From Rebecca billardiae RCC1528 (lineage: Eukaryota > Protista > Haptophyta), in assembly GCA_965240325.2 (NCBI GenBank), contig OZ251235.1:620001-684000 (forward strand): 64,000 nt of DNA, given 5' to 3'. A program made the translations under genes and the position numbers. The notes under the pieces were generated by a model. That model did no database searches, was not told where the DNA came from, and saw only the letters and a program-made list of their open reading frames with translations. How positions within the stretch are numbered: the first letter of the stretch is position 1; every line of letters starts with the position of its first letter. Positions 35,874-64,000 of the stretch are shown here, one piece after another.

Positions 35874-37640
35874 ATGGCCGCCGATGACCCGCCACGGCGC
35901 TTTGCGCTACTCCTCGTCGGACTGATCGGCTCTCTGCACAAGCGGGCCTCGAGAGGCGATCACCAGCGGTCGATTAAGAACGCTCCGTTCGAGGAGCTCG
36001 CCTCGCCTCGCATCATCCGGTACGCCACCATGACGCACCGCGCGCTCGTGCTCGATGCGAACGAGCCAGCCGGCGGCGTGGACGTGTTTGCACACTCGTG
36101 GAACCCGCTCGCTGGCGCGTTCCTGGACGCGCAGTTCGGGGATCGGATGCGACTCTCTGCGCACGAGCCCATCGAGCACCACACGAGCGGTCGCTCGCAC
36201 GCCCTCTCCGTAGGGAGGGGCGGCCAGCTCGTGCGCGCGTTTGAGCGCATGCACAACCATTCTTACGAAACGGTGCTCGTGCTCCGGACCGACCTGTTCC
36301 TCACGCGCGCGGTGGACCTGCGCGAGGTCGTCGCGACGGCGTCAGATGGGGGCGAGCTGCTCTGGTTTGCCAGCAAGTGCTGCACCAGCCCGCCCAACTC
36401 GAGCGCAGAAGCCGCCAGCCTCGCGCAGCAGTGCGGCGCACAAGCTGCGGCGGCGCAGGCGGCTGCAGACCGCCGATCGCCGCCACAGTTCGAATCGAGC
36501 ACGGCCGCGTCGCAGCACCAACGCGCCGTGGGCCTGTTCAAGCACGGGTGCTCCGGTGCGTATTACGCTGGCACGGCCCGGCCGCCGCCGCTCGACGTGG
36601 CCTACTTCCTGCCGGACTGGTGGCTCGCTGCGCGCGCACACACGGTGGCCTCGTGGACGAGCCTTGCCGAGCAGTGGGAGGCGTACAGCTGCGCGCTGCA
36701 GCAGCTGATGCGGCACACGGGCCCGTCGAGCGGTTGGTCGCACTTCCGCTGGCCGGTGCACGTGCATGACGCGCTCGGGCTGACCGGCCGCATGCGCTTC
36801 ACGCGCGCCGTGTCCGGCACGATGGCCCGCACCGCCTTCACCGAGGGCTGGCTTCCTCCGGAGGAGCTGCCGGCCGAGTGCGCCGCCGCATTCGGCACGG
36901 CGCGCGCGAGGCGGGGGCGCGGAGGCGGGGGCGACGTGGGCGCCGAGCTGGACGACGTGCTCGAGCTGCGGAGCACGGCACCCGATGGGCATGCCCAGCT
37001 CGCGCGCCACCGCGCCCGCGACCTCGAGCTCGCCCCCGTTGACGTGCGCGCGCCACAGGCCGACCAGGTGCTCGCGCATATGGGGCTCGACCGACGGTTC
37101 GCGGCGATGGCGCGCGCGTGCCCCTGGACTGAGCTCTCCGTGCGCCGCTCGCTCGGTGGAGCGCACGCGCCGCTGGCGCACTGCGCGGAGGGCATGCAGC
37201 CGGTAGGGCTCGTGCTCGGGACCATCTCGCGAGCGTGCGCGCTGCCCGCACCTGCCCGCGAGGGGCCGCACGGAGGTCGGTACATCAGGCCCGAGCTGCG
37301 CCAGTTCCTGGGAAAGTTCCAGGACGGTCTGCCGCGCGCGTGGCGGCGCAGCGTGGATCAGGCGCAGCGCTCCGTGGCGGGCGAGCGCGGGCGGCATGTG
37401 CGTGTGGCGTTGGCCGCCGCTCGCAGAGCACTGCTCCAGCCAGGCGGAGGCGCTCATCGCTCCGCCACATTCACATCGTCGGCGGTTGGCGGTCTGGACG
37501 CTGAGCTCAGCGGCCTCGAGACAGCTGCCGAGGCGATCGCGGCCGAGATGTACAGCGAGATGCAGCTGCATCTGAGAGGGCTCAAGGCGGCCGCTCCCAG
37601 CTGCGGTACAATCGGCGTGGAGGCGCCATCATCGCTGTAA
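35874..37640 (+). CDS. Hypothetical protein, possibly glycosyltransferase-like
   Basis: 588-aa ORF. ALLLVG...DVFAHSW...YETVLVLRTDL pattern resembles algal/viral GT-A-like proteins. Confidence 0.5.
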   Translation: MAADDPPRRFALLLVGLIGSLHKRASRGDHQRSIKNAPFEELASPRIIRYATMTHRALVLDANEPAGGVDVFAHSWNPLAGAFLDAQFGDRMRLSAHEPIEHHTSGRSHALSVGRGGQLVRAFERMHNHSYETVLVLRTDLFLTRAVDLREVVATASDGGELLWFASKCCTSPPNSSAEAASLAQQCGAQAAAAQAAADRRSPPQFESSTAASQHQRAVGLFKHGCSGAYYAGTARPPPLDVAYFLPDWWLAARAHTVASWTSLAEQWEAYSCALQQLMRHTGPSSGWSHFRWPVHVHDALGLTGRMRFTRAVSGTMARTAFTEGWLPPEELPAECAAAFGTARARRGRGGGGDVGAELDDVLELRSTAPDGHAQLARHRARDLELAPVDVRAPQADQVLAHMGLDRRFAAMARACPWTELSVRRSLGGAHAPLAHCAEGMQPVGLVLGTISRACALPAPAREGPHGGRYIRPELRQFLGKFQDGLPRAWRRSVDQAQRSVAGERGRHVRVALAAARRALLQPGGGAHRSATFTSSAVGGLDAELSGLETAAEAIAAEMYSEMQLHLRGLKAAAPSCGTIGVEAPSSL

Positions 37641-38069
37641 GCGCCGCGCCCACGCGGCAGCCGGCGTGGATGTCGGGGCGGCCGCGCCGCGGCCCCGCAC
37701 TCCGTCGGTCCGTGCAGTCGCGGCCGACTCGGCACTAGCCAGGCAGGCCTGGCACGACTCACCACGCGCCGACCGACGCGCAGCTCGGCTGCTGCCCGAA
37801 TGGCGACGATAGTTTGACGCACACTCACTGACACGGTGCTCAGGCAAATAGGCAATGGCAATCAGTCGGGCTCGGCTCGTCCAGAGTCTCGGAGTCATCG
37901 TATTCGTAGCCTGCGGCTGCAGCTGCAGGCGCCCCCCCGCCTCCGCTCACAGTGTCACGAACTACAATTGTACAGACCGCCAGTACCATAAAAGTCTTCT
38001 CGATCAGGACCGTCCAACTTGGTCCAAGCAAGCGCCGTTCTTGGGCGCTTCACGACGTCGGACGCGAGC

Positions 38070-40652
38070 ATGGGCGGCGCTTGCTGCTCGCAGGCTCGCG
38101 ACGACGCCACGCGTGCGGGGACGGCTGCTGTCACGCAGCCAGCTGACGAGGAGGCTGCTAGTAGCGCTTCCCAGGCGCGTTCCGCGGCAGAGCCGTCCTC
38201 GCCGCCCGCCGAGCGCAGCACGACGCCCGCGGCGGGCGCACAGCCGACTGGAGCGGCAGCCACAGGCCCGCCGTCGGCCGCGGAGCCATCGGCGTCGCCC
38301 GCCGCGCGGCCGCCAGAGCAGGCGACTGGCGCAGCGCGAAACGATGGCGCGGAGACGTCGCGCCCGCCGCACCCGCTGATCAAGGCGTGCACCGACTTGG
38401 AGCAAATGGGCATCCCGCGCGCGCGGCTGCGCGCGTACTGCACGCATGTCCCACCTCCAAGCTCGGCGCGCTGGGGTGCGGAGTGGGGCAAGTGGGTGGA
38501 CGGCGTGGCGACCGCCGCGCCCGACGCGCTGCGGACCGACGTGCCCGCGCAGCCGCCGCCTGGCGCGCCCGACGCCGCGTGGCTGGCGTGGTACGACGCA
38601 TTCATGCCGCCGCCACCGCCGCCGCGGCCGCCTCCAGGCTCAGTCGGCGCGGGCGCGGCGCACGGTGGCGACAGCGGCGACGCGGGCTGCACGATCGGCG
38701 AGACTGCGCTGCGCGGCATCACGCTGCGGCAGCTCGAGGCGCTGTACGCGCGCGCGTGCGCGCTCTGCGCCTCGCACCGCTGGACCTCCACCGCGCCCGG
38801 CCGGTCGGACGTGCCCCTGGCGCCAGGCAGCATCACTCTGTACGACCTCAACCGCTACCTGCTGCTGCCGGAGACGGAGGCGCGCGACTGCGCGATGGTC
38901 GAGCTGATCGCGGCGCGGGCGCAGCCGCCGCAGTGGTTCGCGTCGCACTGGTGGGGCGAGCCGGTGGGCGACTTCATCGAGTGCCTCCGCCGCCACGCGT
39001 ACGACCGCGGCCTGAGCGCGGACACGTCGTACTGGGTGTGCGCGTACGCGAACAGGCAGCACAGCATCGGCGGCGAGCTCGGCGGCGGCGTCGAGTCTTC
39101 GCCGTTCGTGCGCGCGCTGCACCTCGCGGACGGGATGGTGAGCATCGTGGACGGCGGCGGCGCGATCTTCACGCGCGTGTGGTGCGCGTACGAGACGCAC
39201 GTCTCCGTGATCGAGCGCGGCGCCGCCTTCCTGCACGACATCTACACCGCCGCCGTCCCCGCCGGCGCCGTGGACGCCAAGGGCGCGGCCGTGCGCGCGG
39301 TGGGCTACGTCGACGGCTTCGCCGTGGACGACGCGCCCGACGGCGAGGGGTACGACTTCCTCAAGGCGCAGCGCGAGAAGGCGTTCCCCCGCGAGCTGAT
39401 CGAGCGCGCCTCCGGCTTCGAGCTCGCCAACGCCGACGCCTCCGTCCAGTCGGACAAGGAGGCGATCCTCGCCGCGGTCGGCGCCGCCTCGGACGCGGTC
39501 GACGCGACGGTGCGCACGCGGTACGCGCAGGGGCTACTGCCCTTCCTGCTCCGCCGCGGGCCGCACTTCGCGCAGATGGACGCGTTCTGCGCGACGCTCG
39601 CGCGCGCGCGCGTGCGCAAGCTCTCCGCCTACTGCGACCAAGAGCCCTCCGACGCCGCGCTCGAGAAGCTCGTCGCGGCGCTGCCGCCCACCGTGGAGCG
39701 CGTCGCGGTCGTGAGCCACGGGCCTGCGGGCACGGCCGGGCTGGGCGCGCGCGTCGCGGCGGGGCAGCTGCGCGAGCTCGTGCTCACGCACTGCAAGCTG
39801 CGCAAGGCGGACGTGGAGGCGCTCGCCGACGCCGCGTGCCACCCCGGCTCGCGCCTCCACACGCTGTGCCTTCGGTACAACGAGTGGCGCTCCCACCCGG
39901 CGCCGCGCATCGGCGCGGAGATGGGGCGCGTGCTCGGCAGCGCGACCGCGCCCGGCGCGCTGCGCGTGCTCAGGCTGTGGGCGAACGAGCTGGGCGACGA
40001 GGGCGTGGGCGCGCTCGCAGCCGGCCTGCGCGGCAACGCCGCCCTGGAGGAGCTCGACGTCTCCGCCAACGACGTGCAGCTCGACGGCGCGCGCGCGCTC
40101 GGCGCGGCGCTCGCCCTCAACCGCCGGCTCCAGACCCTGAACCTGATCTCGAACAATCTCGGGGACAAGGGCGCGGCCGCGCTCGCGGAGGGCGTGGGCG
40201 GGAACGGCGCGCTGCGCACGCTGCTGCTCGCGGACAACCGGCTCGGGGACCGCGGCGCGCGCGCGTGCGCCGAGATGCTCTCGCACAACCGCGCGCTCAC
40301 CGAGCTCGACCTCTCGAAGAACGAGGAGCTCGGAGCGGCCGGCGTGCGCGCGCTCAGCGCCGTGCTGGGCGGCGCCACCGCCGCGCCTCCGCCCGCGCGC
40401 GGCGCCGACGAGCAGTCGCGCGGCGGGGGCGGAGGCACGGACGGGGAGGACGGCGGGCAGCTTCGCGCGCAGGATGGCGCCGCGCACGCGCCGGCTGGCG
40501 ACGCGAGTGGCCGCGCGAATCGCACGCTGCGCACGCTGCGGTTGACCGGCATCGCGACGACGGCGGCGGCGGCGGCGGCGAGCGCGGAGCTGTTGGAGCA
40601 CTGGCAGCGCAGCGGCAGGGAGCGCGCACGACTCGGCCTGTCGTCGTCCTGA
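38070..40652 (+). CDS. Lipidation-motif (MGxxCCS) HET-like domain + RI-type leucine-rich repeat protein
   Basis: MGGACCS N-terminus. RGITLRQL, WFASHWWGEPV, YWVCAYANRQH and FTRVWCAYE, then 28-aa LRRs (LxLxxNxLGDxGAxALA). Confidence 0.85.
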   Translation: MGGACCSQARDDATRAGTAAVTQPADEEAASSASQARSAAEPSSPPAERSTTPAAGAQPTGAAATGPPSAAEPSASPAARPPEQATGAARNDGAETSRPPHPLIKACTDLEQMGIPRARLRAYCTHVPPPSSARWGAEWGKWVDGVATAAPDALRTDVPAQPPPGAPDAAWLAWYDAFMPPPPPPRPPPGSVGAGAAHGGDSGDAGCTIGETALRGITLRQLEALYARACALCASHRWTSTAPGRSDVPLAPGSITLYDLNRYLLLPETEARDCAMVELIAARAQPPQWFASHWWGEPVGDFIECLRRHAYDRGLSADTSYWVCAYANRQHSIGGELGGGVESSPFVRALHLADGMVSIVDGGGAIFTRVWCAYETHVSVIERGAAFLHDIYTAAVPAGAVDAKGAAVRAVGYVDGFAVDDAPDGEGYDFLKAQREKAFPRELIERASGFELANADASVQSDKEAILAAVGAASDAVDATVRTRYAQGLLPFLLRRGPHFAQMDAFCATLARARVRKLSAYCDQEPSDAALEKLVAALPPTVERVAVVSHGPAGTAGLGARVAAGQLRELVLTHCKLRKADVEALADAACHPGSRLHTLCLRYNEWRSHPAPRIGAEMGRVLGSATAPGALRVLRLWANELGDEGVGALAAGLRGNAALEELDVSANDVQLDGARALGAALALNRRLQTLNLISNNLGDKGAAALAEGVGGNGALRTLLLADNRLGDRGARACAEMLSHNRALTELDLSKNEELGAAGVRALSAVLGGATAAPPPARGADEQSRGGGGGTDGEDGGQLRAQDGAAHAPAGDASGRANRTLRTLRLTGIATTAAAAAASAELLEHWQRSGRERARLGLSSS

Positions 40653-40974: not shown

Positions 40975-43284
40975 ATGACAGACAACAACGGCACGAACGA
41001 CTGGGTGAGTTTGCCATCCGCGCCCCTCGCCGCATTCCTCGCGGGCCTCGACCTCGACGCGGACGCCTTCATGCACGCGACCGGCGTGCACACCCTCGAA
41101 GACGTGGCCGGCCTCAACGACTCTGATCTTGAGCGCGCCGCGCAGTCGTTCGAGCCGAAGCTGGACCTCAGCAAGCTTCGCGACGGGCTGGCGCGACTGC
41201 GTGCGAGCCTGGGCAAGCCAGCCCAAGCGGCGCAGAACTCCCCGGATTCGGCTTCGAACCTCGGCGATGGCAAACCCACCGTCGGGGCCACCTCTACCAC
41301 CACGCCGGTCGCCGAGGCCACGCCCGCGCCCGAGGCCGCGCCCGCCCTCGAGGAGGCAAAGCCTCTCGAGGAGGTGACCGCCATCGCGATCGACCGCAGC
41401 GGCTCAATGCGCTCCCCGCTCAGCACCGATCGCACGCGGATGGAGGCCGTCAAGCAGATGTTCTACGCGTTCCGCGACCGCGTCGACTCGCTCGAGTGCG
41501 ACGGCGGCGGCCGCGCACTCGGCTTGCTGCAGTTCGATCACGAGGCCGAGGTGCTGCTGCCGCCCACGACGGACCTCGACTCCTTCGAGGCGAGCGTGGA
41601 CCATATGAAGGAGCGCGGGCAGACCGCGATCTACTCCGCGATCACCGCCGCAGTGCGCACGCTGCAGCCCGCATTCGAAGCGAGCGCGAGCACCGACCTG
41701 CGGATCGTCGCGCTCACCGACGGCCAGAACAACTCCGGGGAGTCGTGGGAGTCCGCGGCGAGGGCGGCGCGGCGTATCGGCGCCGTCGTCGACGCAATAA
41801 TCGTTGGCAGCTCCCCCGACTCGGGGCTGCGCAAGATCGTCACGGCCACCGGCGGGCAGTGCTTCCACATCGCCTCGCTGTCCGCCGGGTTTGAGCTCCT
41901 TGCGGCGGAGGCGGTCGTCTCGCTGCGTGCGCGGCGCGGCGGGCGCGACAAGCCGCCGCTCGCGCTCGAGGGCGCCGAGGACAGCCTCGACGGCGTGGAA
42001 CTGGCCACGTTGAACGCCTCGACGTCCGTGCCGCGTGCGCCGGCGCTGGCACCGGCGCAGGCGGCATCCAAGGCGACAAGCGTGCACGCGGCCGTGCGCA
42101 GCGCGGCCACCCACCGGGGGGCGACACGGCGCGCGGGCTGCGGCGCCGCCGCCGGTGACGGTGCGGCTCGCGCGCTGGAGGAGGGCGCGCTCGCCGAGGT
42201 GCGTGAGGCGTTCAGCCTTCACGCCACCGGCGGCGCTGCTGGCGAGCTCGCGCGCGAGCAGCTCGGCGACGTGCTGCGTGCGCTGGGCGTGCCGGCAGCT
42301 TCGGAGCAGCAGCTGAGCAGCATGCACGCCGAGGCACGCGCCGCGTCGCTGCCCTCCAGCGGCGTCACGCTGGCCGGACTCGTCACTGTGCTCTCGAAGC
42401 GCATGCTCGACACGGACAGCGAGGAAGAGGTTCTCGCTGCGTTCAAGGCGCTCGACACGGACGGCACCGGCAGGCTCACGCACGCGCAGATGCGGCACGT
42501 GATGAGCTCGCTGGGCGAGGCCGTGACTGACGCCGAGGTCAGCGAGATGTTGCGCTGCGCCGACTGCGACGCCGACGGGATCGCGGACGACGGCAGCGTG
42601 GACTACAAGGAGTTCGTGCAGATGATGCTGGAGGACAAGGCGGCGCCGCCGCCGAACGCCGGCCTCGGCCTGGTCAGCGGCGGCGGCGGCGGCGGCGGTG
42701 CTGCTGGCGGTGGGGGCGGCGGTGGCGGCGGCACCGCCATCACCAACCCGTCCGCACCTCCAGCGCCGTGCCTCCGGCGCGTGCTCAAGGAGCTACGCGA
42801 CCTCGCGGCGGGCTCGCAGCGCGTGTGGATGCACTCGGGCGAGGGCTGCCACATCTTCCCCACCGAGGGCAACCTCTGCCTCTGGCGCGTGCTCATCGAA
42901 GGCCCCGAGGGCACGCCGTTCGCCGGCGGCGTGTTCGCGGCGCACGTGACGATCCCGGAGGCGTACCCGTTCCGCCCGCCCAAGATCGTGCTGGACACGC
43001 CCATCTTCCACCCGAACGTGTCGGACAGCGGCGGGCTCTGCCTTGACATCCTGCGCGACGCGTGGACGCCGTCGCTCACCGTGCCCAAGTGCGTCGAGGC
43101 CGTGCGCCAGCTGATGCGCGACCCCAACCCGAACGATGCCATGCGCCACTCGATCGCAGAGCTCATGCTCGCGCACCTCAAGCACGGCGACGCCGACACG
43201 CGCTTCGTCGACCGGGCGCGCGAGGAGACGGCCAAGCACGCGTCGCGCAGCGTGGAGGAGTGGCGCGCCGCGTGGGGCTGCTGA
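40975..43284 (+). CDS. SAM-like + VWA + calmodulin-like EF-hand + ubiquitin-conjugating (E2) fusion protein
   Basis: VWA: IDRSGSM, GQTAIYSAI, LTDGQNN. CaM-like: TDSEEEVLAAFKALDTDGTGRL...LGEAVTDAEVSEML...VDYKEFVQMM. UBC: GPEGTPFAGGVF, YPFRPPK, FHPNVSDSGGLCLDIL. Single uninterrupted ORF. Confidence 0.92.
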   Translation: MTDNNGTNDWVSLPSAPLAAFLAGLDLDADAFMHATGVHTLEDVAGLNDSDLERAAQSFEPKLDLSKLRDGLARLRASLGKPAQAAQNSPDSASNLGDGKPTVGATSTTTPVAEATPAPEAAPALEEAKPLEEVTAIAIDRSGSMRSPLSTDRTRMEAVKQMFYAFRDRVDSLECDGGGRALGLLQFDHEAEVLLPPTTDLDSFEASVDHMKERGQTAIYSAITAAVRTLQPAFEASASTDLRIVALTDGQNNSGESWESAARAARRIGAVVDAIIVGSSPDSGLRKIVTATGGQCFHIASLSAGFELLAAEAVVSLRARRGGRDKPPLALEGAEDSLDGVELATLNASTSVPRAPALAPAQAASKATSVHAAVRSAATHRGATRRAGCGAAAGDGAARALEEGALAEVREAFSLHATGGAAGELAREQLGDVLRALGVPAASEQQLSSMHAEARAASLPSSGVTLAGLVTVLSKRMLDTDSEEEVLAAFKALDTDGTGRLTHAQMRHVMSSLGEAVTDAEVSEMLRCADCDADGIADDGSVDYKEFVQMMLEDKAAPPPNAGLGLVSGGGGGGGAAGGGGGGGGGTAITNPSAPPAPCLRRVLKELRDLAAGSQRVWMHSGEGCHIFPTEGNLCLWRVLIEGPEGTPFAGGVFAAHVTIPEAYPFRPPKIVLDTPIFHPNVSDSGGLCLDILRDAWTPSLTVPKCVEAVRQLMRDPNPNDAMRHSIAELMLAHLKHGDADTRFVDRAREETAKHASRSVEEWRAAWGC

Positions 43285-43914: not shown

Positions 43915-45002
43915 TCAGCTGGAGCACAGGCTGCGGAGCACGCTGAGGAGCGAGCCGACTGTGCTGCCGAGCACCTCGTTGAGCATCTCGGCCATCAGCT
44001 CGTTCGAGGTGAGCCGGTCGAGCAGCCACGGCATGGCCGCGCTCGCTGCGATCATGAGCGGCTCCTCGACCGTCAGCGTCTGCACCTCGGCGAGGCCCCA
44101 GCTCAGCACCATGTTGCGCGTGACCGTCGGGCCGAACGTGCGCGAGAAGATGACGGCGATCATGCCGAGCCCGGTGAAGATGGCCCACATGCTCAGCCAC
44201 GCGAGCGCGATGCGCACGTACGGGTGCGGCGTGAGCGCGCGCTGCGCTGTCGCGAGGTGCTTCCGCCAGCCGCGCCGCCGCCGCTCCTCGCGCGCCGCCG
44301 CCTGCACGCACATCGCGTCGTACCAGCCGACGAGCTCGGCGAACGAGAGCTCGGCGTTCTGGTCCTTGTCGAGCGACGCGACCAGCTTGCGCACGCGGCG
44401 GCGCGACATGCGGAAGCCGAGCTCCGTGAGTAGCGCGCTCAGCTCGGACACGTCCATGTGGCCGCTGCCGTCCACGTCGAACTTGGCAAACTTGGCGCGG
44501 AGCCGGCGCAGCACGAGCGGCGAGAGCGAGTGCGGCGGGAGGTCAGGCTCGTCGTGGCTGGGCAGCGGCTTGGCCGAGCGCGCGCCGGAGCCGCCGCCGC
44601 CGCCGCCGCCGGGGCCGAGCCAGACGGCCGTCGCCGCCGAGGGCGCGTCGGCGGCGCGCGGCGACGACGCGGCGGGCGCGCGCGGCGGCGGCGAGAGCGC
44701 CGCGGGCGCGCAGCCGCGCTCGGTGGACGGCGCGGCCGTGGGCGCGGCGGCCGGCGAGCGGAGCGCAGCCGCGGCCGGCGTGTTTGCGGCGGCCGCGTCG
44801 GCTGGCCCGTCAGAGGCCGGCGAGGGCGGAGAGGAGGCGCGCAGCGGTGCCGCCAGCGGCTGGAGCGGCGGCTGCGGCGGCAGCGGCGGCGGTGCCTCGG
44901 CTGCGCCGTGGGCGACCCCAGACGGCCCCACCGACCGAGGCGGCGGCGGCCGCAGTGGCCCGCCGGATGGCTCGTCGGCCGGGTGCGGGCGTGGCGGCGG
45001 GC

Positions 45003-45039
<37 letters not shown>

Positions 45040-48000
45040 GCGCGCGCCGAGCTGCGAGCCGGGCGCAGGCCGCAGGCTGCGGACGCCCTGGGGCAGCCTG
45101 GGCGGCATGGGCGCGCGCGTGCGCGCGACGCCAAAGCTGGGCGCGCCGCGCGTGGCCGCCGCAAAGTCGTCGGCCGGATCCTCGGGCGGCACGGCGACGC
45201 GCGCGCCCGCCAGCGTGCTGTCGGCGCGCGTGAGCTGCATCGCCGACGCCGGCGCGCCTGGCTCGGGGGGCGAGCGCGGCGGCGAGGGCGGCGGCGTCGC
45301 GTGTGGGATGAAGCCGGGGGGCCCAACCTCGCACGCGCCAGGCGGCGCGCGGCGCGGCGCGGCGCGCCCGGAGGCGGAGCCGCTCGCGCTCGTCGGCCGC
45401 GCGGGCTGCGGCGCGGCGTGCGCCTCCGCCGCGTCCAGCTCCGCGCCCGGCCCCGCCGCGGGCCCCGCCGCCGCGCCGCCCGCCTCCGCCAGCCACTCCA
45501 TCTCGGACACGTCCGACGCGTCCGACAGCTCTGAGGCCGCCCGGCTGAGCCGCGCGCCGCCGCCGCTCTCGGCGCGGCCGTCGTGCGCGCCGCCGCCGTG
45601 CGCGCCAGCGCCGCCCTCCGGCTCGATGCGCACGGTGGGCCGCGCGCCGCCGGCGGCGCTGAGGCCGCGCCAGCCCGCGCCGGCGGGGCTGCCGCCCGGC
45701 GTGCCCCCGGCGGGGCTGCTGCCATCGCCGTCGGCGGCGTCGGCGGCGTCGTCGGCGTCCGCGTGGATGCGCGGGGCGGCGCCGCTGCGCCTGCTGCGCC
45801 CGCGCCAGAGCGCGCTCGCTGACGAGCTGCCGTGCGCGCAGGCGGCCGCCGACTCCTCGCCCTCGCCCTCGGCGTGGATGCGCACAGCGCCGCCGCCGCG
45901 CCCGCGGCGGCCGCGGCCCTCCGCGGGGCTCGCGCCGCCACTGCCTCCGGCGGAGTTTGCACCGCCATCCGCGTCCGCGTCGGCGTCGCTGTCTGCATGG
46001 ACGCGCGGACCGTCGGCAGCGGACGCGCGGTGCGCCGCGCGCCGCGCGCACGAGAGCGCCGCGGCGACGCCGATGGCTGGGGCCGAGTCACGAGCGCGAG
46101 CGCTGCAGCCACCCGCGGCACCGCACGAGGTGGCCGGGGGCGTGGGCCGGGCGGGCGAGGCCGGCGGCCCGCGGCTGCCGCTGCTCGCGCCGCTGCCCGG
46201 CCGCGCGGCGCACGCGCCCAGCGCCGCGATGCGCGGCGAGGCGGCGGCGGCAGGCGCCGCGCCGCCCTCGGCGCGCGCGCCGAGGCCACGCGGGGACGCC
46301 GGGCTGGGCCTGGGCGTGACGTGGTCGCCGCGGAGCACGCGCGCCGACAGCCCGGAGGAAAGAGGGCGCGCGACGCGCGGCGGCTGCACGGCGGGCGAGC
46401 GCGAGCCTGCAGGCTGCTCGCCGTCGGGCCAGACGCGCACGCCCGGGCTTCGAGCGCCGCCGCCGCGCGTGCCGTGCTGCTGCTGCCGCGGCGACGAGTG
46501 CGCGGACGAGCCGTCGGCGTCGGGCCAGACGCGCACGCCAGGGCTCCTTGCCCCGCCGCCGCCGCCGTCCGCGCCTTCGCGCGGCGTCCGCGCGGACGCG
46601 GACGCCGACGCCGCGGGCGCGCCCTCAGCGCGCTGCGCTGCCAGCCGGCCGTCCTCCTCCGCCTCGGGGTCGAGCAGCCTGGCGAACACGCGCGTGGCGA
46701 GCGGCGCCTGCCGGCCGTAGCCGAGCGTGAAGATGGCGCGGAAGAGCGCGAGCGCGGGCAGCGTGAGCCCCGCGGTGATGCACGCGAACAGCACGAGCTG
46801 CACGAGATTGAGCGAGATTGCGCCCTCCTCGCCGCCGCCCGCGCCCGGCTCGGGCGGCGGCGCGCTCGACGTGTCGTACAGCATGCACTCGATCACGAGC
46901 GCGAGCATGCACACGCTCCAGAAGCACTGGCACAGCTCGGCGCGCTTGGCCGTCTCGGGGTCTCCAAACCAGAGGCCGAGCAGAGTGTGTTCCGACTCGA
47001 GCGCGTCGAGCAGCATGCGGTACAGCCGCGTGAGGGAGTGGTCCGCGGCGCGCTCAGCGCCGAGGGCGGGCGCCTCGGCGTGGCCGCGCAGCTGCGCCGC
47101 CTCGCGCCGCGCGGCGCGCCCGCGCGTGGCGGCCTGGATCAGCAGCGCCGCCCTCTCCGCCTGCGCCGCGAGTGCGCCGTCCAGCCGGTCGAGCCGCGCC
47201 TCGAGCGCGGCCGCGCGCGCCTCGCGCGCCGCGCGCCGCGCCTCCTCCTGGCGCGCGGCCTCGAGGCGGCGCCGCGCCGTGTCCGCGCGGTCGCGCAGGC
47301 CGAAGGCGGCGACGGAGAGCGCGCACGCGCCCGCCATCCCGAGCACGAGCCCGTACACCCACGGGTTGTCCGCGATCGCCTCTGGCGAGGCCTGCAGCCC
47401 CGAGCGCGCGTCCTGCGCCGAAAACGTGTTCACGCGCACGCTCGACGCCTCCTGCGCGGCCTCGCCCGCGGACGCGGGCACGGCGATGCCGCCAAAGTCG
47501 GTGAGGTGCGTGCAGCTGCAGTACAGCAGGCTCGGGTCCGCCCCCTGCGGCGCGGGCACGCGCGTGCACCCTTCCTGGCTCCACTCGGCCAGCGTCTCGT
47601 CCCAGTAGAAGCACTGCGCCTCCTCCGCGCACGACGGTCCCGTGTACGGCGGCACGCAGTCGCACGCGCCGTCGGAGGCGCAGTAGCCGCGGCCCAGGTG
47701 CGCGGCGCACTCGTCGAGCTCGGCGCACACGCCCGACGGCCCGACCACGCGCTCCGCCGCCGCGGGCGACAGCGGGAGCCCGATCACGACCGGCTCGTCC
47801 AGGCCCTGCACGCGCACGCTCAGCCCGTCGGCCGCGCCCTTGATCGAGACGGAGAAGACGGCGGTCTGCAGCGGCCCCGTGGACGAGCCGCCGCTCTGCA
47901 GCCGGCGGCGCGCGGTGCGGCGGCGGTCGGCCGCGGCGGAGGGCTGCGCGCCCGCCCCGCCCGGCTGCGCCTGCTCAGCCGCCGCGCACCCCAGCTCGGC

Positions 48001-50445
48001 GTAGATGTTGTCTGCGATCACGGCTGTGTGCAGCACGGCGGCGCCGCCGCTCGCGTTGGCGAGCGCGGCCGCCGAGAGCTCGAGCGCGCCCTGCCCGCCG
48101 GGGCCGGCGAGCGTGCCGTTGGCGAGCGCGGCCTTGGTCGCGACGACGGCGCTGATGTTCACCTTCGGCGTCGTCGCCTCGGTGCCCGGCTCGCCCGGCA
48201 CGCCGCCCGCCGTCATCGTCGACGCGAGCGCGTCCGCCGCCGCCTTGGTCGCGGCGTGCACGGCCGCGAGCGCGGGCGCGGTGCAGTTGGCCGTCTCGTT
48301 GGCGCCCGCCTCGGCGAGGGCGCGGCGGCGGCTGGCGGACGCGTCGGCGGACTGCAGCACGCAGCTCATCGTGCTGACCACGTCGCGCGCGAACGCGTCC
48401 GACGAGCCCTCGCCCGACGCGGCGGCGGCGGCGCCCGCGACCGTGCCGACCGCCAGCAGCTGGCCGCTCTCGTCGAGCGCGCAGCCCGAGCGGAGCGCGA
48501 TGGACGCGACGACGGAGGCGGCCTGCTGCGTGGAGTCGGAGGTGGCGACGGAGGCGGCGGCGACGGCGCTCGCCGTGCTGAGCATCGCCGTGGACACCGC
48601 GCTCGAGCCCCCGCCCGCCGTCGAGTTGGACGAGCCGGTGTCCAGCCGGCGGCGGCGGCGGGCGCCGCCGCCCGCGTCGCAGCCGAGCTCGTCGCCCGCC
48701 GCGCCCGCGAGCGAGAGGAGGAGCTGCATCGCCGACGCGCCCGAGCCGGTGTCCGCCGCGGTGTTGGCGGCGTCGAGCGCCGCGCCGACCGCGTCGCAGT
48801 CCAGCGCCGGCGCCGGCTCGACGCGCACGCCGCCCACCGACGCGCGCGCGGACGCGCCATAAAAGTCGTACACCGACACGGTCACGGCGAGCTCGCCCGC
48901 GGGCAGGAACGCGCGCGCCGTCTTCGCCCTCACGCGCTCGCCGAGCGACTGGGGCGCGTCGGCGCCGCTCGGCAGGTACGAGTAGCCGTACTCGAGCGGC
49001 GAGTCCTCCGGGTCGTCCGTCCAGCCGTTCGCCTGCAGCACAAACTGCGTGCCCAGCTCGACGCCGCCGGCCATCGGCGAGACCGTCAGGTCGCCGCCGT
49101 ACGGCGGCCGGTTCATCTGCACGCTCACCGACGCGACCGCGGGCTGCGAGCCGCCAAAGACGCGGAGCTCGAAGACGTAGATCGCGCCGGGCGTGAGCAC
49201 GCCCGAGCGGAACGCCAGGGCGGGCTGGTCCGCGCCCGTCGTCGTCACGCCCGCCGCGTCCGCGAGGTCGAGCCCCGCGTCGGCGAGCTGCCCCGCGACC
49301 GAGAGCCGCGCGCTCCAGCGGTACGCGAACGCGGCCTGGCCCGCCGCCTCGCGCGCGGCCGAGGCGGCGTCGAGGCTGGTGGAGAGCGAGACGCGCTGCG
49401 TGGGGAGCGACCACGTCGGGTTGTACTTGAGCGCGGTGAGCGGCGCGAACGAGACCACCGGCACCGCGCCGCCCACCACCTCGAGCACGACGGCCGCGCT
49501 CGCGGGCGCGAGGCCGCTCTTTGAGAGCGTGAGGCTGATCGTGTAGTTGCCCTCCGCGAGCTGCACCGCCTCGGGCACGGCGAGCACCGGGCCGTCGAGG
49601 GCGACGCCCGCGTCGAAGGCGGCGGGCGTGCCGTGCGTCGCGTTCAGCCGGCGCGCCACCGACCACGCGAACGAGAGCTCCGGGCCGAGCCCGGCGCCGT
49701 CGGGCACGTTGGGGGCGTACGAGGCGGACGCGTCAATCTCGAGATCTCCCGTGGTGCTCACGCGGCGGTCGCCGCCCGAGATGATGGCCTGCAGCGGCTG
49801 CGCGACGACGACGAGGCGGACCGACGCGCTCGTCGCCGAGCTCGGGTCCGCGCCCATCGCCGCCGAGAGCCTCAGCGTGTACGTGCGCGACGGCACGAGC
49901 GAGAAGGCGGGGATGCGCAGCGACGCGCGCTCCGGCTCGGCGAGCGCGAGCGACGTGTCGGCGCTCGCGTCGGCGCCCGCCGCGTCCGTGATCGACTCGA
50001 CCGACCACGCAAAGTCGATCTGCGCGGAGTCGTCGGCGGGCCAGCAGTCGGCGAGCGCAGCCACGCCCTTGAGCAGCACGCTCGACGCCGGCCGCGCGGT
50101 CAGCTCGAACGGCCCGTCGATCGAGAGCGAGGGCGTGGCGCCGCCCGCGCGCGTGACCGCCCAGCGCACGAGCGCGGACGTGCGGCCGAGGAACGACGAG
50201 ACGCGGAGCAGGAAGACGAAGGAGGAGCCCTCGAGCCCGTCGAGCGTGAGCACCGACGTCGACGGCGGAAAGGCCGCGCTGTCCGCCAGCCGCGCGTTGA
50301 GCTGCGCCGCGAAGTCGGAGACGCCCGGGTCGACGCGCCACGTGTACGTGAGGTCCTTGATGCCGCCGCCGGTCGAGCCGCTGCCGTCGAGCACGAGCAC
50401 CTCGCCCGGGCACGACGAGATCTGGGTGGGCCCGTTGAGCGCGGA
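43915..50445 (-). CDS. Polycystin-1-like membrane protein (REJ, EGF, GPS, multi-TM, IQ, EF-hand pair); 5' part missing or interrupted
   Basis: REJ motifs (LVLDGSGS, IISGGDR, IDASASY, NRPPYGG.L.VSP, WTDD...PLEY). EGF CDCVPPYTGPSC. GPS CFYWD...WSQEGC...CSCTHLTDFG. TM, IQAATRGRAAR, EHTLLGLW. EF loops DVDGSGHMDVSE and DKDQNAELSFAE. C-terminal TMs. Confidence 0.85.
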
Positions 50446-50612
50446 GCGTTTAGAGCTGGTGGCGATTGCAGTCCATCTGTCTGTGAACTGGTCGCTAACT
50501 GACACGGGTGCGACGCAGCAGCCAACGCAGAGTGCTTGCAGCTTGCAGAGGGCCTCCAGCTGCCGGGCGGTTTGCCGCCGCTCGCCGCTGCATCGTGCAC
50601 ACTGCCGTGCAC

Positions 50613-53600
50613 ACGCCCCCGAGGCCCGGGGCGGGCGGCCCGGCGCGCGGCGTGACGGCCGGGGGTGCGCGCGAGGGCCGCCCTGTCCCATCGGCGCCCT
50701 TTGACCCGCCTCGGCGGCTCGCTCCTTCGGCGCGCGCTCCGTCTCGGTGAGCGCCGCCGCCGGCCTGCAGCGCGCGGCAGAGCGCGGCGGCGCGGCGGCG
50801 CGCGACTTGCCCGCTGCCCGCGGCCCAGCGCCCCCGAGGCCCGGGGCGGGCGGCCCGGCGCGCGGCGTGACGGCCGGGGGTGCGCGCGAGGGCCGCCCTG
50901 TCCCATCGGCGCCCTTCGACCCGCCTCTCCGGCGCGCGCTCCGTCTCGGCGAGCGCCGCCGCCGGCCTGCAGCGCGCGGCAGAGCGCGCCGGCGGCTCGA
51001 CTTGCCCGCTGCCCGCGGCCCAGCGCCCCCGAGGCCCGGGGCGGGCGGCCCGGCGCGCGGCGTGACGGCCGGGGGTGCGCGCGAGGGCCGCCCTGTCCCA
51101 TCGGCGCCCTTTGACCCGCCTCGGCGGCTCGCTCCTTCGGCGCGCGCTCCGTCTCGGCGAGCGCCGCCGCCGGCCTGCAGCGCGCGGCAGAGCGCGCCGG
51201 CGGCTCGACTTGCCCGCTGCCCGCGGCCCAACGCCCCCGAGGCCCGGGGCGGGCGGCCCGGCGCGCGGCGCGACGGCCGGGGGTGCGCGCGAGGGCCGCC
51301 CTGTCCCATCGGCGCCCTTTGACCCGCCTCGGCGGCTCGCTCCTTCGGCGCCCGCTCCGTCTCGGCGAGCGCCGCCGGCATGCAGCGCGCGGCAGAGCGC
51401 GCCGGCGGCTCGACTTGCCCGCGCCCGACGGCCCAACGCCCCCGGGGCCCGGGGCGGGCGGCCCGGCGCGCGGCGTGACGGCCGGGGGTGCGCGCGAGGG
51501 CCGCCCTGTCCCATCGGCGCCCTTCGACCCGCCTCGGCGGCTCGCTCCTCCGGCGCGCGCTCCGCCGCGGCGAGCGCCGCCGCCGGCCTGCAGCGCGCGG
51601 CAGAGCGCGCCGGCGGCTCGACTTGCCCGCTGCCCGCGGCCCAGCGCCCCCGAGGCCCGGGGCGGGCGGCCCGGCGCGCGGCGTGACGGCCGGGGGTGCG
51701 CGCGAGGGCCGCCCTGTCCCATCGGCGCCCTTCGACCCGCCTCGGCGGCTCGCTCCTCCGGCGCGCGCTCCGTCTCGGCGAGCGCCGCCGCCGGCCTGCA
51801 GCGCGCGGCAGAGCGCGCCGGCGGCTCGACTTGCCCGCTGCCCGCGGCCCAGCGCCCCCGAGGCCCGGGGCGGGCGGCCCGGCGCGCGGCGTGACGGCCG
51901 GGGGTGCGCGCGAGGGCCGCCCTGTCCCATCGGCGCCCTTTGACCTGCCTCGGCGGCTCGCTCCTTCGGCGCGCGCTCCGCCGCGCGCCGCCGGCCTGCA
52001 GCGCGCGGCAGAGCGCGGCGGCGCGGCGGCGCGCGACTTGCCCGCTGCCCGCGGCCCAGCGCCCCCGAGGCCCGGGGCGGGCGGCCCGGCGCGCGGCGTG
52101 ACGGCCGGGGGTGCGCGCGAGGGCCGCCCTGTCCCATCGGCGCCCTTCGACCCGCCTCGGCGGCTCGCTCCTCCGGCGCGCGCTCCGCCGCGGCGAGCGC
52201 CGCCGCCGGCCTGCAGCGCGCGGCAGAGCGCGGCGGCGCGGCGGCGCGCGGCGGCTCGACTTGCCCGCGGCCCAGCGCCCCCGAGGCCCGGGGCGGGCGG
52301 CCCGGCGCGCGGCGTGACGGCCGGGGGTGCGCGCGAGGGCCGCCCTGTCCCATCGGCGCCCTTTGACCCGCCTCGGCGGCTCGCTCCTTCGGCGCGCGCT
52401 CCGTCTCGGTGAGCGCCGCCGCCGGCCTGCAGCGCGCGGCAGAGCGCGGCGGCGCGGCGGCGCGCGACTTGCCCGCTGCCCGCGGCCCAGCGCCCCCGAG
52501 GCCCGGGGCGGGCGGCCCGGCGCGCGGCGTGACGGCCGGGGGTGCGCGCGAGGGCCGCCCTGTCCCATCGGCGCCCTTCGACCCGCCTCGGCGGCTCGCT
52601 CCTCCGGCGCGCGCTCCGTCTCGGCGAGCGCCGCCGCCGGCCTGCAGCGCGCGGCAGAGCGCGCCGGCGGCTCGACTTGCCCGCTGCCCGCGGCCCAGCG
52701 CCCCCGAGGCCCGGGGCGGGCGGCCCGGCGCGCGGCGTGACGGCCGGGGGTGCGCGCGAGGGCCGCCCTGTCCCATCGGCGCCCTTTGACCCGCCTCGGC
52801 GGCTCGCTCCTTCGGCGCGCGCTCCGTCTCGGCGAGCGCCGCCGCCGGCCTGCAGCGCGCGGCAGAGCGCGCCGGCGGCTCGACTTGCCCGCTGCCCGCG
52901 GCCCAACGCCCCCGAGGCCCGGGGCGGGCGGCCCGGCGCGCGGCGCGACGGCCGGGGGTGCGCGCGAGGGCCGCCCTGTCCCATCGGCGCCCTTTGACCC
53001 GCCTCGGCGGCTCGCTCCTTCGGCGCCCGCTCCGTCTCGGCGAGCGCCGCCGGCATGCAGCGCGCGGCAGAGCGCGCCGGCGGCTCGACTTGCCCGCGCC
53101 CGACGGCCCAACGCCCCCGGGGCCCGGGGCGGGCGGCCCGGCGCGCGGCGTGACGGCCGGGGGTGCGCGCGAGGGCCGCCCTGTCCCATCGGCGCCCTTC
53201 GACCCGCCTCGGCGGCTCGCTCCTCCGGCGCGCGCTCCGCCGCGGCGAGCGCCGCCGCCGGCCTGCAGCGCGCGGCAGAGCGCGCCGGCGGCTCGACTTG
53301 CCCGCTGCCCGCGGCCCAGCGCCCCCGAGGCCCGGGGCGGGCGGCCCGGCGCGCGGCGTGACGGCCGGGGGTGCGCGCGAGGGCCGCCCTGTCCCATCGG
53401 CGCCCTTCGACCCGCCTCGGCGGCTCGCTCCTCCGGCGCGCGCTCCGTCTCGGCGAGCGCCGCCGCCGGCCTGCAGCGCGCGGCAGAGCGCGCCGGCGGC
53501 TCGACTTGCCCGCTGCCCGCGGCCCAGCGCCCCCGAGGCCCGGGGCGGGCGGCCCGGCGCGCGGCGTGACGGCCGGGGGTGCGCGCGAGGGCCGCCCTGT

Positions 53601-62600: not shown

Positions 62601-64000
62601 GGCGTGACGGCCGGGGGTGCGCGCGAGGGCCGCCCTGTCCCATCGGCGCCCTTCGACCCGCCTCGGCGGCTCGCTCCTCCGGCGCGCGCTCCGTCTCGGC
62701 GAGCGCCGCCGCCGGCCTGCAGCGCGCGGCAGAGCGCGCCGGCGGCTCGACTTGCCCGCTGCCCGCGGCCCAGCGCCCCCGAGGCCCGGGGCGGGCGGCC
62801 CGGCGCGCGGCGTGACGGCCGGGGGTGCGCGCGAGGGCCGCCCTGTCCCATCGGCGCCCTTTGACCTGCCTCGGCGGCTCGCTCCTTCGGCGCGCGCTCC
62901 GCCGCGCGCCGCCGGCCTGCAGCGCGCGGCAGAGCGCGGCGGCGCGCCGGCGGCTCGACTTGCCCGCTGCCCGCGGCCCAACGCCCCCGAGGCCCGGGGC
63001 GGGCGGCCCGGCGCGCGGCGCGACGGCCGGGGGTGCGCGCGAGGGCCGCCCTGTTCCCATCGGCGCCCTTTGACCCGCCTCGGCGGCTCGCTCCTTCGGC
63101 GCCCGCTCCGTCTCGGCGAGCGCCGCCGGCATGCAGCGCGCGGCAGAGCGCGCCGGCGGCTCGACTTGCCCGCGCCCGACGGCCCAACGCCCCCGGGGCC
63201 CGGGGCGGGCGGCCCGGCGCGCGGCGTGACGGCCGGGGGTGCGCGCGAGGGCCGCCCTGTCCCATCGGCGCCCTTCGACCCGCCTCGGCGGCTCGCTCCT
63301 CCGGCGCGCGCTCCGTCTCGGCGAGCGCCGCCGCCGGCCTGCAGCGCGCGGCAGAGCGCGCCGGCGGCTCGACTTGCCCGCTGCCCGCGGCCCAGCGCCC
63401 CCGAGGCCCGGGGCGGGCGGCCCGGCGCGCGGCGTGACGGCCGGGGGTGCGCGCGAGGGCCGCCCTGTCCCATCGGCGCCCTTTGACCTGCCTCGGCGGC
63501 TCGCTCCTTCGGCGCCCGCTCCGTCTCGGCGAGCGCCGCCGGCATGCAGCGCGCGGCAGAGCGCGCCGGCGGCTCGACTTGCCCGCGCCCGACGGCCCAA
63601 CGCCCCCGGGGCCCGGGGCGGGCGGCCCGGCGCGCGGCGTGACGGCCGGGGGTGCGCGCGAGGGCCGCCCTGTCCCATCGGCGCCCTTCGACCCGCCTCG
63701 GCGGCTCGCTCTTCCGGCGCGCGCTCCGCCGCGGCGAGCGCCGCCGCCGGCCTGCAGCGCGCGGCAGAGCGCGGCGGCGCGGCGGCGCGCGGCGGCTCGA
63801 CTTGCCCGCGGCCCAGCGCCCCCGAGGCCCGGGGCGGGCGGCCCGGCGCGCGGCGTGACGGCCGGGGGTGCGCGCGAGGGCCGCCCTGTCCCATCGGCGC
63901 CCTTTGACCCGCCTCGGCGGCTCGCTCCTTCGGCGCCCGCTCCGTCTCGGCGAGCGCCGCCGGCATGCAGCGCGCGGCAGAGCGCGCCGGCGGCTCGACT
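50613..64000. repeat. GC-rich satellite array, ~64 monomers of 205-216 bp with higher-order repeats; runs off the window end
   Basis: Anchor gtgcgcgcgagggccgccctgtcccatcgg recurs at 50665, 50880, 51075, 51283 ... 63652, 63868. About 85% GC by hand count of one monomer. Confidence 0.98.

What the first reader, a model, noticed from the sequence alone, without database searches (positions are those of the whole stretch)
38070..40652. Membrane-tethered HET(TIR-like)-LRR protein without an NTPase: candidate minimal immune/cell-death receptor
Seen: an MGGACCS N-terminus (myristoylation plus palmitoylation pattern), a domain with SHWWG / YWVCAYANxQ / TRVWCAYE, and RI/NLRC3-type LRRs. No P-loop (NACHT or NB-ARC) lies between them. 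Known: these motifs match the pattern of the fungal HET domain (PF06985), a TIR-related cell-death effector with a conserved Glu. Inference: a direct sensor-effector fusion in an alga.
Basis: partly seen in the sequence, partly recalled or inferred. Interest (0 to 1): 0.75.

Follow-up and report, generated by a model that had tools for sequence, protein, structure and literature searches.

The report
Lipid-anchored TIR-like enzyme domain plus LRR
A GC-rich haptophyte alga has a real single-exon gene joining a predicted lipid anchor, a Pfam-unrecognised domain predicted to have the TIR (immune NAD-cleaving) fold with a conserved glutamate, and a leucine-rich-repeat module with no NTPase switch; it belongs to an unnamed family across marine phytoplankton whose function is untested.

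Summary
Window 38070-40652 (+) is one 860-aa open frame. It starts MGGACCS, carries the three quoted motifs at aa 292, 321 and 368, has RI-type LRRs at aa ~505-770, and has no Walker A or NACHT/NB-ARC.

- No Pfam model, HET or TIR, matches the middle domain at E<=10. The HET model finds nothing over its cut-off in the whole genome.
- The near-invariant Glu375 sits on the helix after strand C, where TIR enzymes hold their catalytic Glu.
- A profile comparison links the domain (prob 90%, P 1.4e-6) to the HET/TIR-like domain of H-NOX fusion proteins in this genome. Earlier notes of this scan had flagged those fusions.

The family has 27 loci here, mostly with LRRs. It also occurs in other haptophytes, diatoms and dinoflagellates (a chlorophyte lead rests only on ESM Atlas look-alikes), fused to LRRs, EF-hands, kinesin or ankyrin/CAP-Gly. 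About a quarter of members start with a myristoylation pattern.

Best reading: a membrane-tethered TIR-superfamily effector controlled by its LRR. NADase activity and an immune or death role are inferred, not shown.

The parts
38070..40652 (+). Complete single-exon coding sequence, 860 aa plus stop
   Evidence: Open frame and translation. GC3 0.93. Collinear homologues down to E 5e-83. An identical gene sits next to the same VWA-E2 neighbour on an independent Logan contig.
38070..38090 (+). MGGACCS: N-myristoylation pattern (Gly2) with Cys5/Cys6 as candidate palmitoylation sites
   Evidence: Fits M-G-{EDRKHPFYW}-x-x-[STAGCN]-{P}. The same pattern, mostly MGC or MGG, starts 8 homologues and paralogue L005. 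The modification itself is inferred.
38091..38360 (+). Ala/Pro-rich low-complexity linker (aa 8-97)
   Evidence: Composition of the first 205 aa: 48 Ala, 34 Pro. Not aligned to homologues.
38361..38609 (+). Small conserved N-terminal module (aa 98-180), function unknown
   Evidence: Aligns only with the closest homologues P0004 and P0005. No Pfam hit.
38682..38918 (+). N-terminal helical subdomain of the conserved domain (aa 205-283; RGITLxQL and NLYD blocks)
   Evidence: Conserved across the family. pLDDT above 90, two long helices. Lies outside the part that aligns to TIR structures.
38919..39569 (+). TIR-like core (aa 284-500): five strands and flanking helices, with a large insertion before a long last helix
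38943..38960 (+). SHWWGE block at the end of strand A (aa 292-297)
   Evidence: S, H, W and G at least 90% conserved; E297 at least 90% in A1/A2 only. Strand at model residues 85-88. Aligns with FVSHxW of the H-NOX-fused domain.
39030..39059 (+). YWVCAYANRQ block, strand B and the following loop (aa 321-330)
   Evidence: W322 and A327 are invariant in every alignment of other-species homologues; C324 and Q330 are invariant in A1/A2 and at least 90% in A5. Strand at model residues 116-118.
39171..39194 (+). TRVWCAYE block at the start of helix C; candidate catalytic Glu375 is codon 39192-39194
   Evidence: R369 and W371 invariant, C372 and E375 at least 90% conserved. Helix at model residues 166-178, right after strand C at 151-155. 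hhalign puts E375 on the invariant Glu of this genome's canonical TIR_2 domains, though the alignment is weak (P 0.025).
39438..39470 (+). AS-x3-D-x3-IL block at the start of the long last helix (aa 457-467)
   Evidence: D462 and I466 invariant in A1/A2 and at least 90% in A5; A457 at least 90%. Aligns with AxCxxxADRxxL of the H-NOX-fused domain.
39582..40379 (+). Ribonuclease-inhibitor-type LRR module, about 7-8 repeats of 28-29 aa (aa 505-770)
   Evidence: Pfam LRR_6 1.4e-17. Repeat starts at aa 567, 631, 659, 687 and 715. PDB sequence matches to RI, NLRP and NOD LRRs down to 7e-25.
40380..40649 (+). Gly/Ala-rich C-terminal tail with one more LRR-like unit (aa 771-860)
   Evidence: Translation. 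Poorly aligned to homologues.

Best explanation
The gene encodes a cytosolic protein that is probably held on a membrane by N-terminal myristate and palmitate.

Its conserved 296-aa domain is a divergent member of the TIR superfamily, on the HET-like side. It has an extra N-terminal helical subdomain and a conserved polar pocket: His293, Trp295, Glu297, Gln330, Asp361, Arg369, Trp371 and Glu375.

By analogy with enzymatic TIRs, Glu375 would cleave the glycosidic bond of NAD(P)+ or a related nucleotide once domains come together. That would either make a nucleotide signal or deplete NAD+.

The C-terminal RI-type LRR would be the regulatory part. It could bind a ligand or partner, or hold the enzyme domain inactive. 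Because there is no NTPase switch, activation would have to come straight from LRR-driven clustering on the membrane.

Shown here: gene, architecture, predicted fold, residue conservation, family spread. Inferred: acylation, catalysis, how activation works, biological role.
For: - Coding single-exon ORF with collinear homologues.
- E375 is at least 90% conserved. It lies four residues after invariant W371 on the helix following strand C. It aligns to the invariant Glu of canonical TIR_2 domains of this genome.
- hhalign links the family to the H-NOX-fused HET/TIR-like domain (prob 90.4, P 1.4e-6). That domain scores P 0.0017 against TIR_2 and weakly hits Pfam HET and TIR_2.
- Partners differ between members: RI-LRR, other LRRs, EF-hands, kinesin, Ank+CAP-Gly. 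This fits an output module joined to different sensing or targeting modules.
- The MG(C/G) acylation pattern recurs in 8 homologues and one paralogue.
- LRR_6 1.4e-17. No Walker A or NACHT/NB-ARC.
Against: - No sequence method places the domain in TIR or HET directly: Pfam has no hit at E<=10, the PDB profile search found nothing relevant, and hhalign against TIR_2 gives only P 0.025.
- I could not superpose coordinates, so the equivalence of E375 to the TIR catalytic Glu rests on secondary-structure order and a weak alignment.
- Many TIR domains are non-enzymatic adaptors.
- Several paralogues (L008, L013, L020) have lost the motifs.
- No expression, infection or biochemical data exist for this gene.
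- Kinesin, CAP-Gly and EF-hand partners point as much to cytoskeletal or calcium signalling as to immunity.
Confidence: 0.55

Rival explanations
1. Non-catalytic adaptor. The TIR-like domain only mediates protein-protein assembly, as in MyD88, MAL or TRIF. The protein would be a membrane scaffold that recruits partners through its LRR and TIR-like surfaces.
Against: A set of polar residues (H293, E297, Q330, D361, R369, E375) is invariant or nearly so across haptophytes, diatoms and dinoflagellates. That pattern is more typical of an active site than of an interface. The best neighbours are the enzymatic plant TIRs and SARM1.
Confidence: 0.15
2. True HET domain (Pfam PF06985): an algal orthologue of the fungal heterokaryon-incompatibility death domain.
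For: By eye there are three collinear blocks resembling the HET pattern. Dyrka et al. 2014 (PMC4986451) report HET homologues in Haptophyceae and a remote HET-TIR homology. The related H-NOX-fused domain hits HET at E 0.052 over HET positions 5-74 and is linked to this family at hhalign prob 90%.
Against: The curated HET model gives no hit at E<=10 for this protein or for 12 paralogue domains. It gives nothing over its cut-off anywhere in the genome (best E 0.17, at unrelated places). No homologue carries a precomputed PF06985 label. The strand-B block lacks the Asp that the H-NOX-fused relatives keep (FVDKxCIxQ against YWVCAYANRQ).
Confidence: 0.12
3. Housekeeping nucleotide-processing or second-messenger enzyme with no link to defence. 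One example would be an ADP-ribosyl-cyclase-like source of calcium-mobilising messengers. Another would be a nucleoside or nucleotide hydrolase of the deoxyribosyltransferase/DNPH1/MilB type, targeted to membranes or the cytoskeleton.
Against: TIRs consistently outrank deoxyribosyltransferases. Twenty-seven loci in one genome, with LRRs more diverged than the enzyme domain in the closest paralogues (27-30% against 48%), look more like a receptor-type expansion than a housekeeping enzyme.
Confidence: 0.18

Closest known systems
Enzymatic TIR domains of plant NLRs and TIR-only proteins (RPS4, RUN1, RPP1, L6) and of SARM1/TIR-1
   Different: No Pfam TIR model matches. The core is about 220 aa instead of 140-170, because of an insertion before a long last helix. 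There is an extra 80-aa N-terminal helical subdomain. The family-specific SHWWGE and CAYANRQ blocks are absent from TIRs. The partner is an RI-type LRR directly, without NB-ARC (plants) or ARM-SAM (SARM1).
Fungal HET domain (PF06985)
   Same: Remote TIR-related effector domain that occurs with varied sensor partners. A similar three-block pattern by eye. Indirect profile link through the H-NOX-fused domain.
   Different: Fails the HET model completely. The block on strand B lacks the acidic residue. How HET works is itself unknown (PMC10890737).
H-NOX fused to a HET/TIR-like domain in the same genome (13 HNOB loci; earlier notes s1-343702, s1-346296)
   Same: hhalign prob 90.4, P 1.4e-6, with collinear FVSHxW...Q, F[ST]RxWCxxE and AxxxxxDRxxL blocks.
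   Different: Separate loci and a separate family: the family HMM does not detect them. The sensor is a haem NO-binding domain instead of an LRR. They keep FVDKxCIxQ on strand B.
Toll-like receptors and NLRs (NLRC3/NOD-type LRR)
   Same: LRR plus TIR-type module at a membrane. The LRRs are of the RI/NLR 28-29-residue class.
   Different: No signal peptide or transmembrane helix, so both modules are cytosolic. The order is TIR-like then LRR. There is no NACHT or NB-ARC.

Membership tests
TIR superfamily (fold level) | Three-layer alpha/beta fold with five parallel strands A-E, and TIR domains as nearest solved structures | tested here: met
TIR superfamily (sequence families PF01582, PF13676 and kin) | Match to a curated TIR profile | tested here: not met
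   No TIR family at E<=10 for the protein or for 12 paralogue domains, and none among the 25 of 55 families listed for the 29 homologues. hhalign against this genome's TIR_2 domains gives P 0.025, prob 2%. The genome's canonical TIR_2 loci lie elsewhere.
Enzymatic TIR (NADase) | Conserved catalytic Glu on helix C facing the NAD+ pocket | tested here: inconclusive
   E375 is at least 90% conserved and lies at the start of the helix after strand C. It aligns to the invariant TIR_2 Glu in a weak hhalign. No coordinate superposition was possible.
Enzymatic TIR (NADase) | NAD+ cleavage dependent on that Glu | not testable with these tools
   Needs a biochemical assay of wild type against E375A.
HET domain (PF06985) | Score over the Pfam gathering cut-off (22.5 bits) | tested here: not met
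   No hit at E<=10. In the whole-genome six-frame scan the best hit is 17.6 bits, E 0.17, at unrelated places.
HET domain (PF06985) | Three conserved blocks in the HET order | tested here: inconclusive
   Collinear blocks are seen by eye. The only indirect tool support is that the H-NOX-fused relative matches HET positions 5-74 at E 0.052 and is linked to this family at prob 90%. The HET consensus itself is recalled from memory.
NLR / STAND receptors | Central NACHT or NB-ARC NTPase with a Walker A motif | tested here: not met
   No such Pfam hit. No [AG]x4GK[ST] or GK[ST] anywhere in the protein.
Ribonuclease-inhibitor-type LRR (LRR_6) | Pfam LRR_6 over its cut-off, with a 28-29-residue period | tested here: met
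   62.7 bits against a cut-off of 23.4. Repeat starts 28 residues apart at aa 631-715. RI and NLRP matches.
N-myristoylated / palmitoylated proteins | M-G-{EDRKHPFYW}-x-x-[STAGCN]-{P} at the true N-terminus, with nearby Cys | tested here: met
   MGGACCS fits, and it is the only ATG upstream of the conserved parts. The modification itself is not testable here.
Toll-like receptors | Transmembrane helix between an extracellular LRR and a cytosolic TIR | tested here: not met
   Best 19-residue Kyte-Doolittle mean is 1.3, so no membrane helix. The order is TIR-like then LRR.

The most novel reading that the evidence does not exclude
Together with its H-NOX-fused sister family, this Pfam-invisible TIR/HET-like domain would be the output module of a phytoplankton-wide signalling and death system that works without NLRs. 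Different sensors (LRR for ligands, EF-hand for calcium, H-NOX for NO) would directly switch on a membrane-tethered NAD+-cleaving enzyme. Its products or NAD+ depletion would then decide cell fate during viral infection and bloom collapse.
Probability: 0.2. Interest if true: 0.85.

Novelty: new variant of a known kind. Interest (0 to 1): 0.6.

Why it matters
TIR enzymes are central to immunity in bacteria, plants and animals. In marine microalgae only Pfam-detectable TIRs have been looked at, and those were reported to lack LRR or NBS partners (PMC12489294).

This gene belongs to a separate family with a TIR fold that standard profiles miss:
- it has 27 loci in this genome;
- it occurs in haptophytes, diatoms and dinoflagellates, and perhaps chlorophytes (ESM Atlas lead only);
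- it is usually joined directly to LRRs or other sensor-like modules, and often to a lipid anchor.

If the conserved Glu is catalytic, the family gives a simple two-part sensor-effector design with no NTPase. It also gives a testable candidate for NAD-based signalling or cell death in bloom-forming algae. A Pfam model for the domain would re-annotate many proteins now labelled hypothetical.

Tried and rejected
- Pfam on the whole protein, on three sub-regions, on 29 homologues and on 12 paralogue domains at E<=10: only LRR, EF-hand, Ank, kinesin and CAP-Gly partners, nothing for the domain.
- PDB sequence search with the domain and with a family profile: only noise.
- Pfam HET model over the whole genome: nothing.
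- ESM Atlas: 30 nearest clusters, all unnamed. The nearest named one (H-NOX, 0.75) served only as a lead.
- hhalign against canonical TIR_2 domains: correct register but not significant.
- Family HMM against the H-NOX proteins: no significant hit. Only profile-profile comparison linked them.
- IMG/VR scan with the two best motifs: 25 pattern matches, none a relative. The first try with alignment A3 failed for lack of a conserved stretch.
- BFVD viral structures: no match under E 0.18.
- A third word search, with a profile, added one EF-hand fusion and no HET- or TIR-labelled protein.
- PF27087 on the closest homologues is an LRR family (LRR_TMOD-LMOD), not the new domain.
- Literature searches found no description of this family.
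- The large profile search (search of protein representatives) was not run. The fold and family scans had settled the main question, and the operators flagged its cost.
- Rejected: a chance ORF in GC-rich DNA (homologues and GC3 exclude it); a hidden NTPase; a transmembrane receptor.
Full report
**Observation**

The window is very GC-rich, 60-86% in 2-kb steps. Long ORFs therefore appear in every frame around 38-41 kb.
- It runs from 38019 to 40652 on the + strand.
- Its first ATG, at 38070, gives 860 aa beginning MGGACCS.
- GC3 is 0.93, against 0.60 at second codon positions.
- Collinear homologues reach E 5e-83.
- Conservation shared with the closest homologues begins upstream of the next Met (aa 113), so 38070 is the likely start.
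- An independent Logan assembly holds the identical gene beside the same VWA-EF-hand-E2 neighbour. There the gene caller started at Met113.

All quoted motifs lie at the stated places. The protein has no Walker A or GK[ST] motif and no stretch hydrophobic enough for a membrane helix.

**What standard annotation sees**

Pfam finds only RI-type LRRs (LRR_6, 1.4e-17) in aa ~560-765. The best solved sequence relatives of that part are ribonuclease inhibitor, axonemal RI-like proteins and NLRP/NOD LRRs.

The 330 residues before the LRR match no Pfam family at E<=10 and nothing in the PDB by sequence. The HET model (PF06985) also finds nothing over its cut-off in a six-frame scan of the whole 72-Mb genome.

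**The family**

Word-based searches returned 43 proteins in all, one of them this gene's own product.
- Sources include Pavlovales sp. CCMP2436, the diatom Seminavis robusta, the dinoflagellate Polarella glacialis and MMETSP transcriptomes.
- None has a name or a Pfam label for this domain.
- The ESM Atlas lists 30 unnamed look-alike clusters. The three shown are commonest in diatoms, chlorophytes and haptophytes.
- Partner domains differ: RI-type LRR, other LRRs, EF-hands, a kinesin motor, ankyrin plus CAP-Gly.

In the window's own genome, 38 matching pieces fall into 27 loci on 20 contigs. Seven of ten paralogue ORFs scanned also carry LRR_6 over its cut-off, and an eighth has a weaker match.

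Residue conservation across 29-37 sequences from other species:
- invariant in all three alignments: W322, A327, F346, R369, W371, F439;
- invariant or at least 90% in all three: S292, H293, W295, G296, C324, A325, Q330, D361, E375, D462, I466;
- at least 90% in two of three: E297, Y326, C372.

Three paralogues (L008, L013, L020) have degraded motifs.

An MG(C/G) start fitting the N-myristoylation pattern, often with Cys3, occurs in 8 homologues and in paralogue L005. Membrane tethering therefore looks like a recurring trait of the family, although it is only predicted.

**Fold**

AlphaFold2 on aa 205-500 with 28 sequences gave pLDDT 92.4 and pTM 0.91. The core alone (aa 280-500, 37 sequences) gave pLDDT 90.1.

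| Search | Model | Best matches |
|---|---|---|
| Foldseek, PDB | aa 205-500 | weak, E >= 0.065; TIRs among the top rows |
| Foldseek, PDB | core, aa 280-500 | top 9 all TIR; RUN1 E 6e-3 |

Secondary structure follows the TIR order:
- strand A: WFAS, followed by the HWWGE loop;
- helix A;
- strand B: YWV;
- a loop and helix B;
- strand C: MVSIV;
- helix C, beginning RVWCAYE;
- strands D and E;
- a roughly 60-residue insertion;
- a long last helix.

An 80-residue helical subdomain precedes strand A and has no TIR counterpart.

**The glutamate**

E375 lies four residues after invariant W371, at the start of helix C. From my own knowledge, plant TIRs (SxWCLxEL) and SARM1 (W638...E642) carry the catalytic Glu in the same arrangement.

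As a tool test I aligned nine canonical TIR_2 domains from this same genome. Their only invariant residues are one Gly and that Glu. hhalign of the family against them is not significant (P 0.025), but it uses the expected register and places E375 on the TIR Glu. I could not superpose coordinates, so the equivalence is probable, not proven.

**Link to HET**

Earlier notes of this scan (s1-343702, s1-346296) reported H-NOX proteins with a TIR/HET-like domain in this genome. I tested the connection.
- The 13 HNOB loci are distinct from the 27 family loci.
- The family HMM does not detect them.
- Six of them carry collinear blocks FVSHxW, FVDKxCIxQ, F[ST]RLWCxxE and AxCxxxADRxxL.
- Local hhalign of the two alignments gives prob 90.4, P 1.4e-6, and the register extends over all blocks.
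- One H-NOX protein weakly hits Pfam HET (E 0.052, HET positions 5-74) and TIR_2 (E 0.13).
- The H-NOX domain scores P 0.0017 against TIR_2.

The family therefore sits in a HET/TIR-like neighbourhood. It is not a member of PF06985.

Dyrka et al. 2014 (PMC4986451) describe the remote HET-TIR homology and HET homologues in Haptophyceae. PMC10890737 states that the mechanism of HET is still unknown.

**Mechanism**

The most economical reading has four parts:
- a lipid-anchored cytosolic protein;
- a TIR-like domain that is an enzyme using E375 on NAD(P)+ or a related nucleotide;
- activation by self-association, as in known TIR enzymes;
- a C-terminal LRR that supplies regulation through ligand or partner binding, or through autoinhibition, because no NTPase switch exists.

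The varied partners in other members fit an output module combined with different inputs. Among the closest paralogues the LRR part is more diverged (27-30% identity) than the TIR-like part (48%). That is compatible with diversifying recognition but does not prove it.

I put 0.55 on this reading, including Glu-dependent catalysis regulated by the LRR; the TIR fold alone I rate higher, near 0.8, and an immune or death role lower, near 0.3.

Three rivals remain: an adaptor-only TIR, a non-immune nucleotide or second-messenger enzyme, and true HET membership.

**Novelty**

I found no paper on this family. A 2025 study of Gephyrocapsa huxleyi (PMC12489294) defined TIR genes by Pfam TIR families and reported that they lack LRR or NBS partners, so it very likely did not capture this family. 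No viral relatives appeared in IMG/VR or BFVD.

I class the finding as a new variant of a known kind: the TIR superfamily fold in an unrecognised sequence family and an unreported architecture (acyl anchor, TIR-like domain, RI-LRR, no NTPase).

**Limits**

I did not verify this.
- The large profile search was not run, for cost reasons, so the size of the family outside this genome is not measured.
- No spliced model was needed.
- Nothing here looked human, viral or toxin-related.

Noticed in passing
G000 C14:1154811, C14:1160487, C24:210120, C3:2180662, C3:2510871, C27:332360, C36:466462 and six more (loci L036-L047): There are thirteen H-NOX (PF07700) loci. At least six of the ORFs carry a C-terminal HET/TIR-like domain with FVSHxW / FVDKxCIxQ / RLWCxxE blocks. 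One hits Pfam HET at E 0.052 and TIR_2 at E 0.13.
   Followed up: partly
G000 C13:293189, C5:1949398-1950210, C13:1545244-1546164, C34:1015527, C10:3069773 and others (L023-L034): At least ten canonical TIR_2 domains score over the Pfam cut-off. They include two ORFs that each hold a tandem pair of TIR_2 domains (C5, 898 aa; C13, 888 aa).
   Followed up: no
L010:1054-2169, L016:1501-2511, L020:895-1842: Three paralogues carry long Arg/Ala-rich in-frame insertions inside otherwise conserved blocks. They look like unspliced introns read through in GC-rich DNA.
   Followed up: no
L013, L020, L008 (paralogue domains in alignment A3): These paralogues have lost the SHWWG block and, in L013 and L020, the RxWC block too (L008 keeps R and W but not the Cys); L013 has also lost the Glu. 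Their frames stay open, so they may be pseudo-enzymes or decoys.
   Followed up: no
window 40975-43284 (+): The downstream neighbour is a 769-aa ORF with VWA, EF-hand and ubiquitin-conjugating (UQ_con) Pfam hits on the matching Logan contig. Another note of the scan already covers it.
   Followed up: no
window 35874-37640 (+): The upstream neighbour is a 588-aa ORF of unknown nature. It was not examined.
   Followed up: no
window 44000-64000: GC content rises to 77-81% at 44-52 kb. It reaches 85-86% with strongly negative AT skew from about 52 kb to the end of the window, consistent with the satellite array noted by other readers.
   Followed up: no
L035:1246-3492 (Logan ERR14847151 contig): The public gene call for this protein (P0001, 748 aa) starts at internal Met113. 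It therefore misses the acylation motif and the conserved residues upstream of that Met.
   Followed up: yes
window 38361-38609 (aa 98-180): A small Trp-rich module (HPLI...RAYC...W..W) is conserved only with the two closest homologues, P0004 and P0005. It has no family hit.
   Followed up: no
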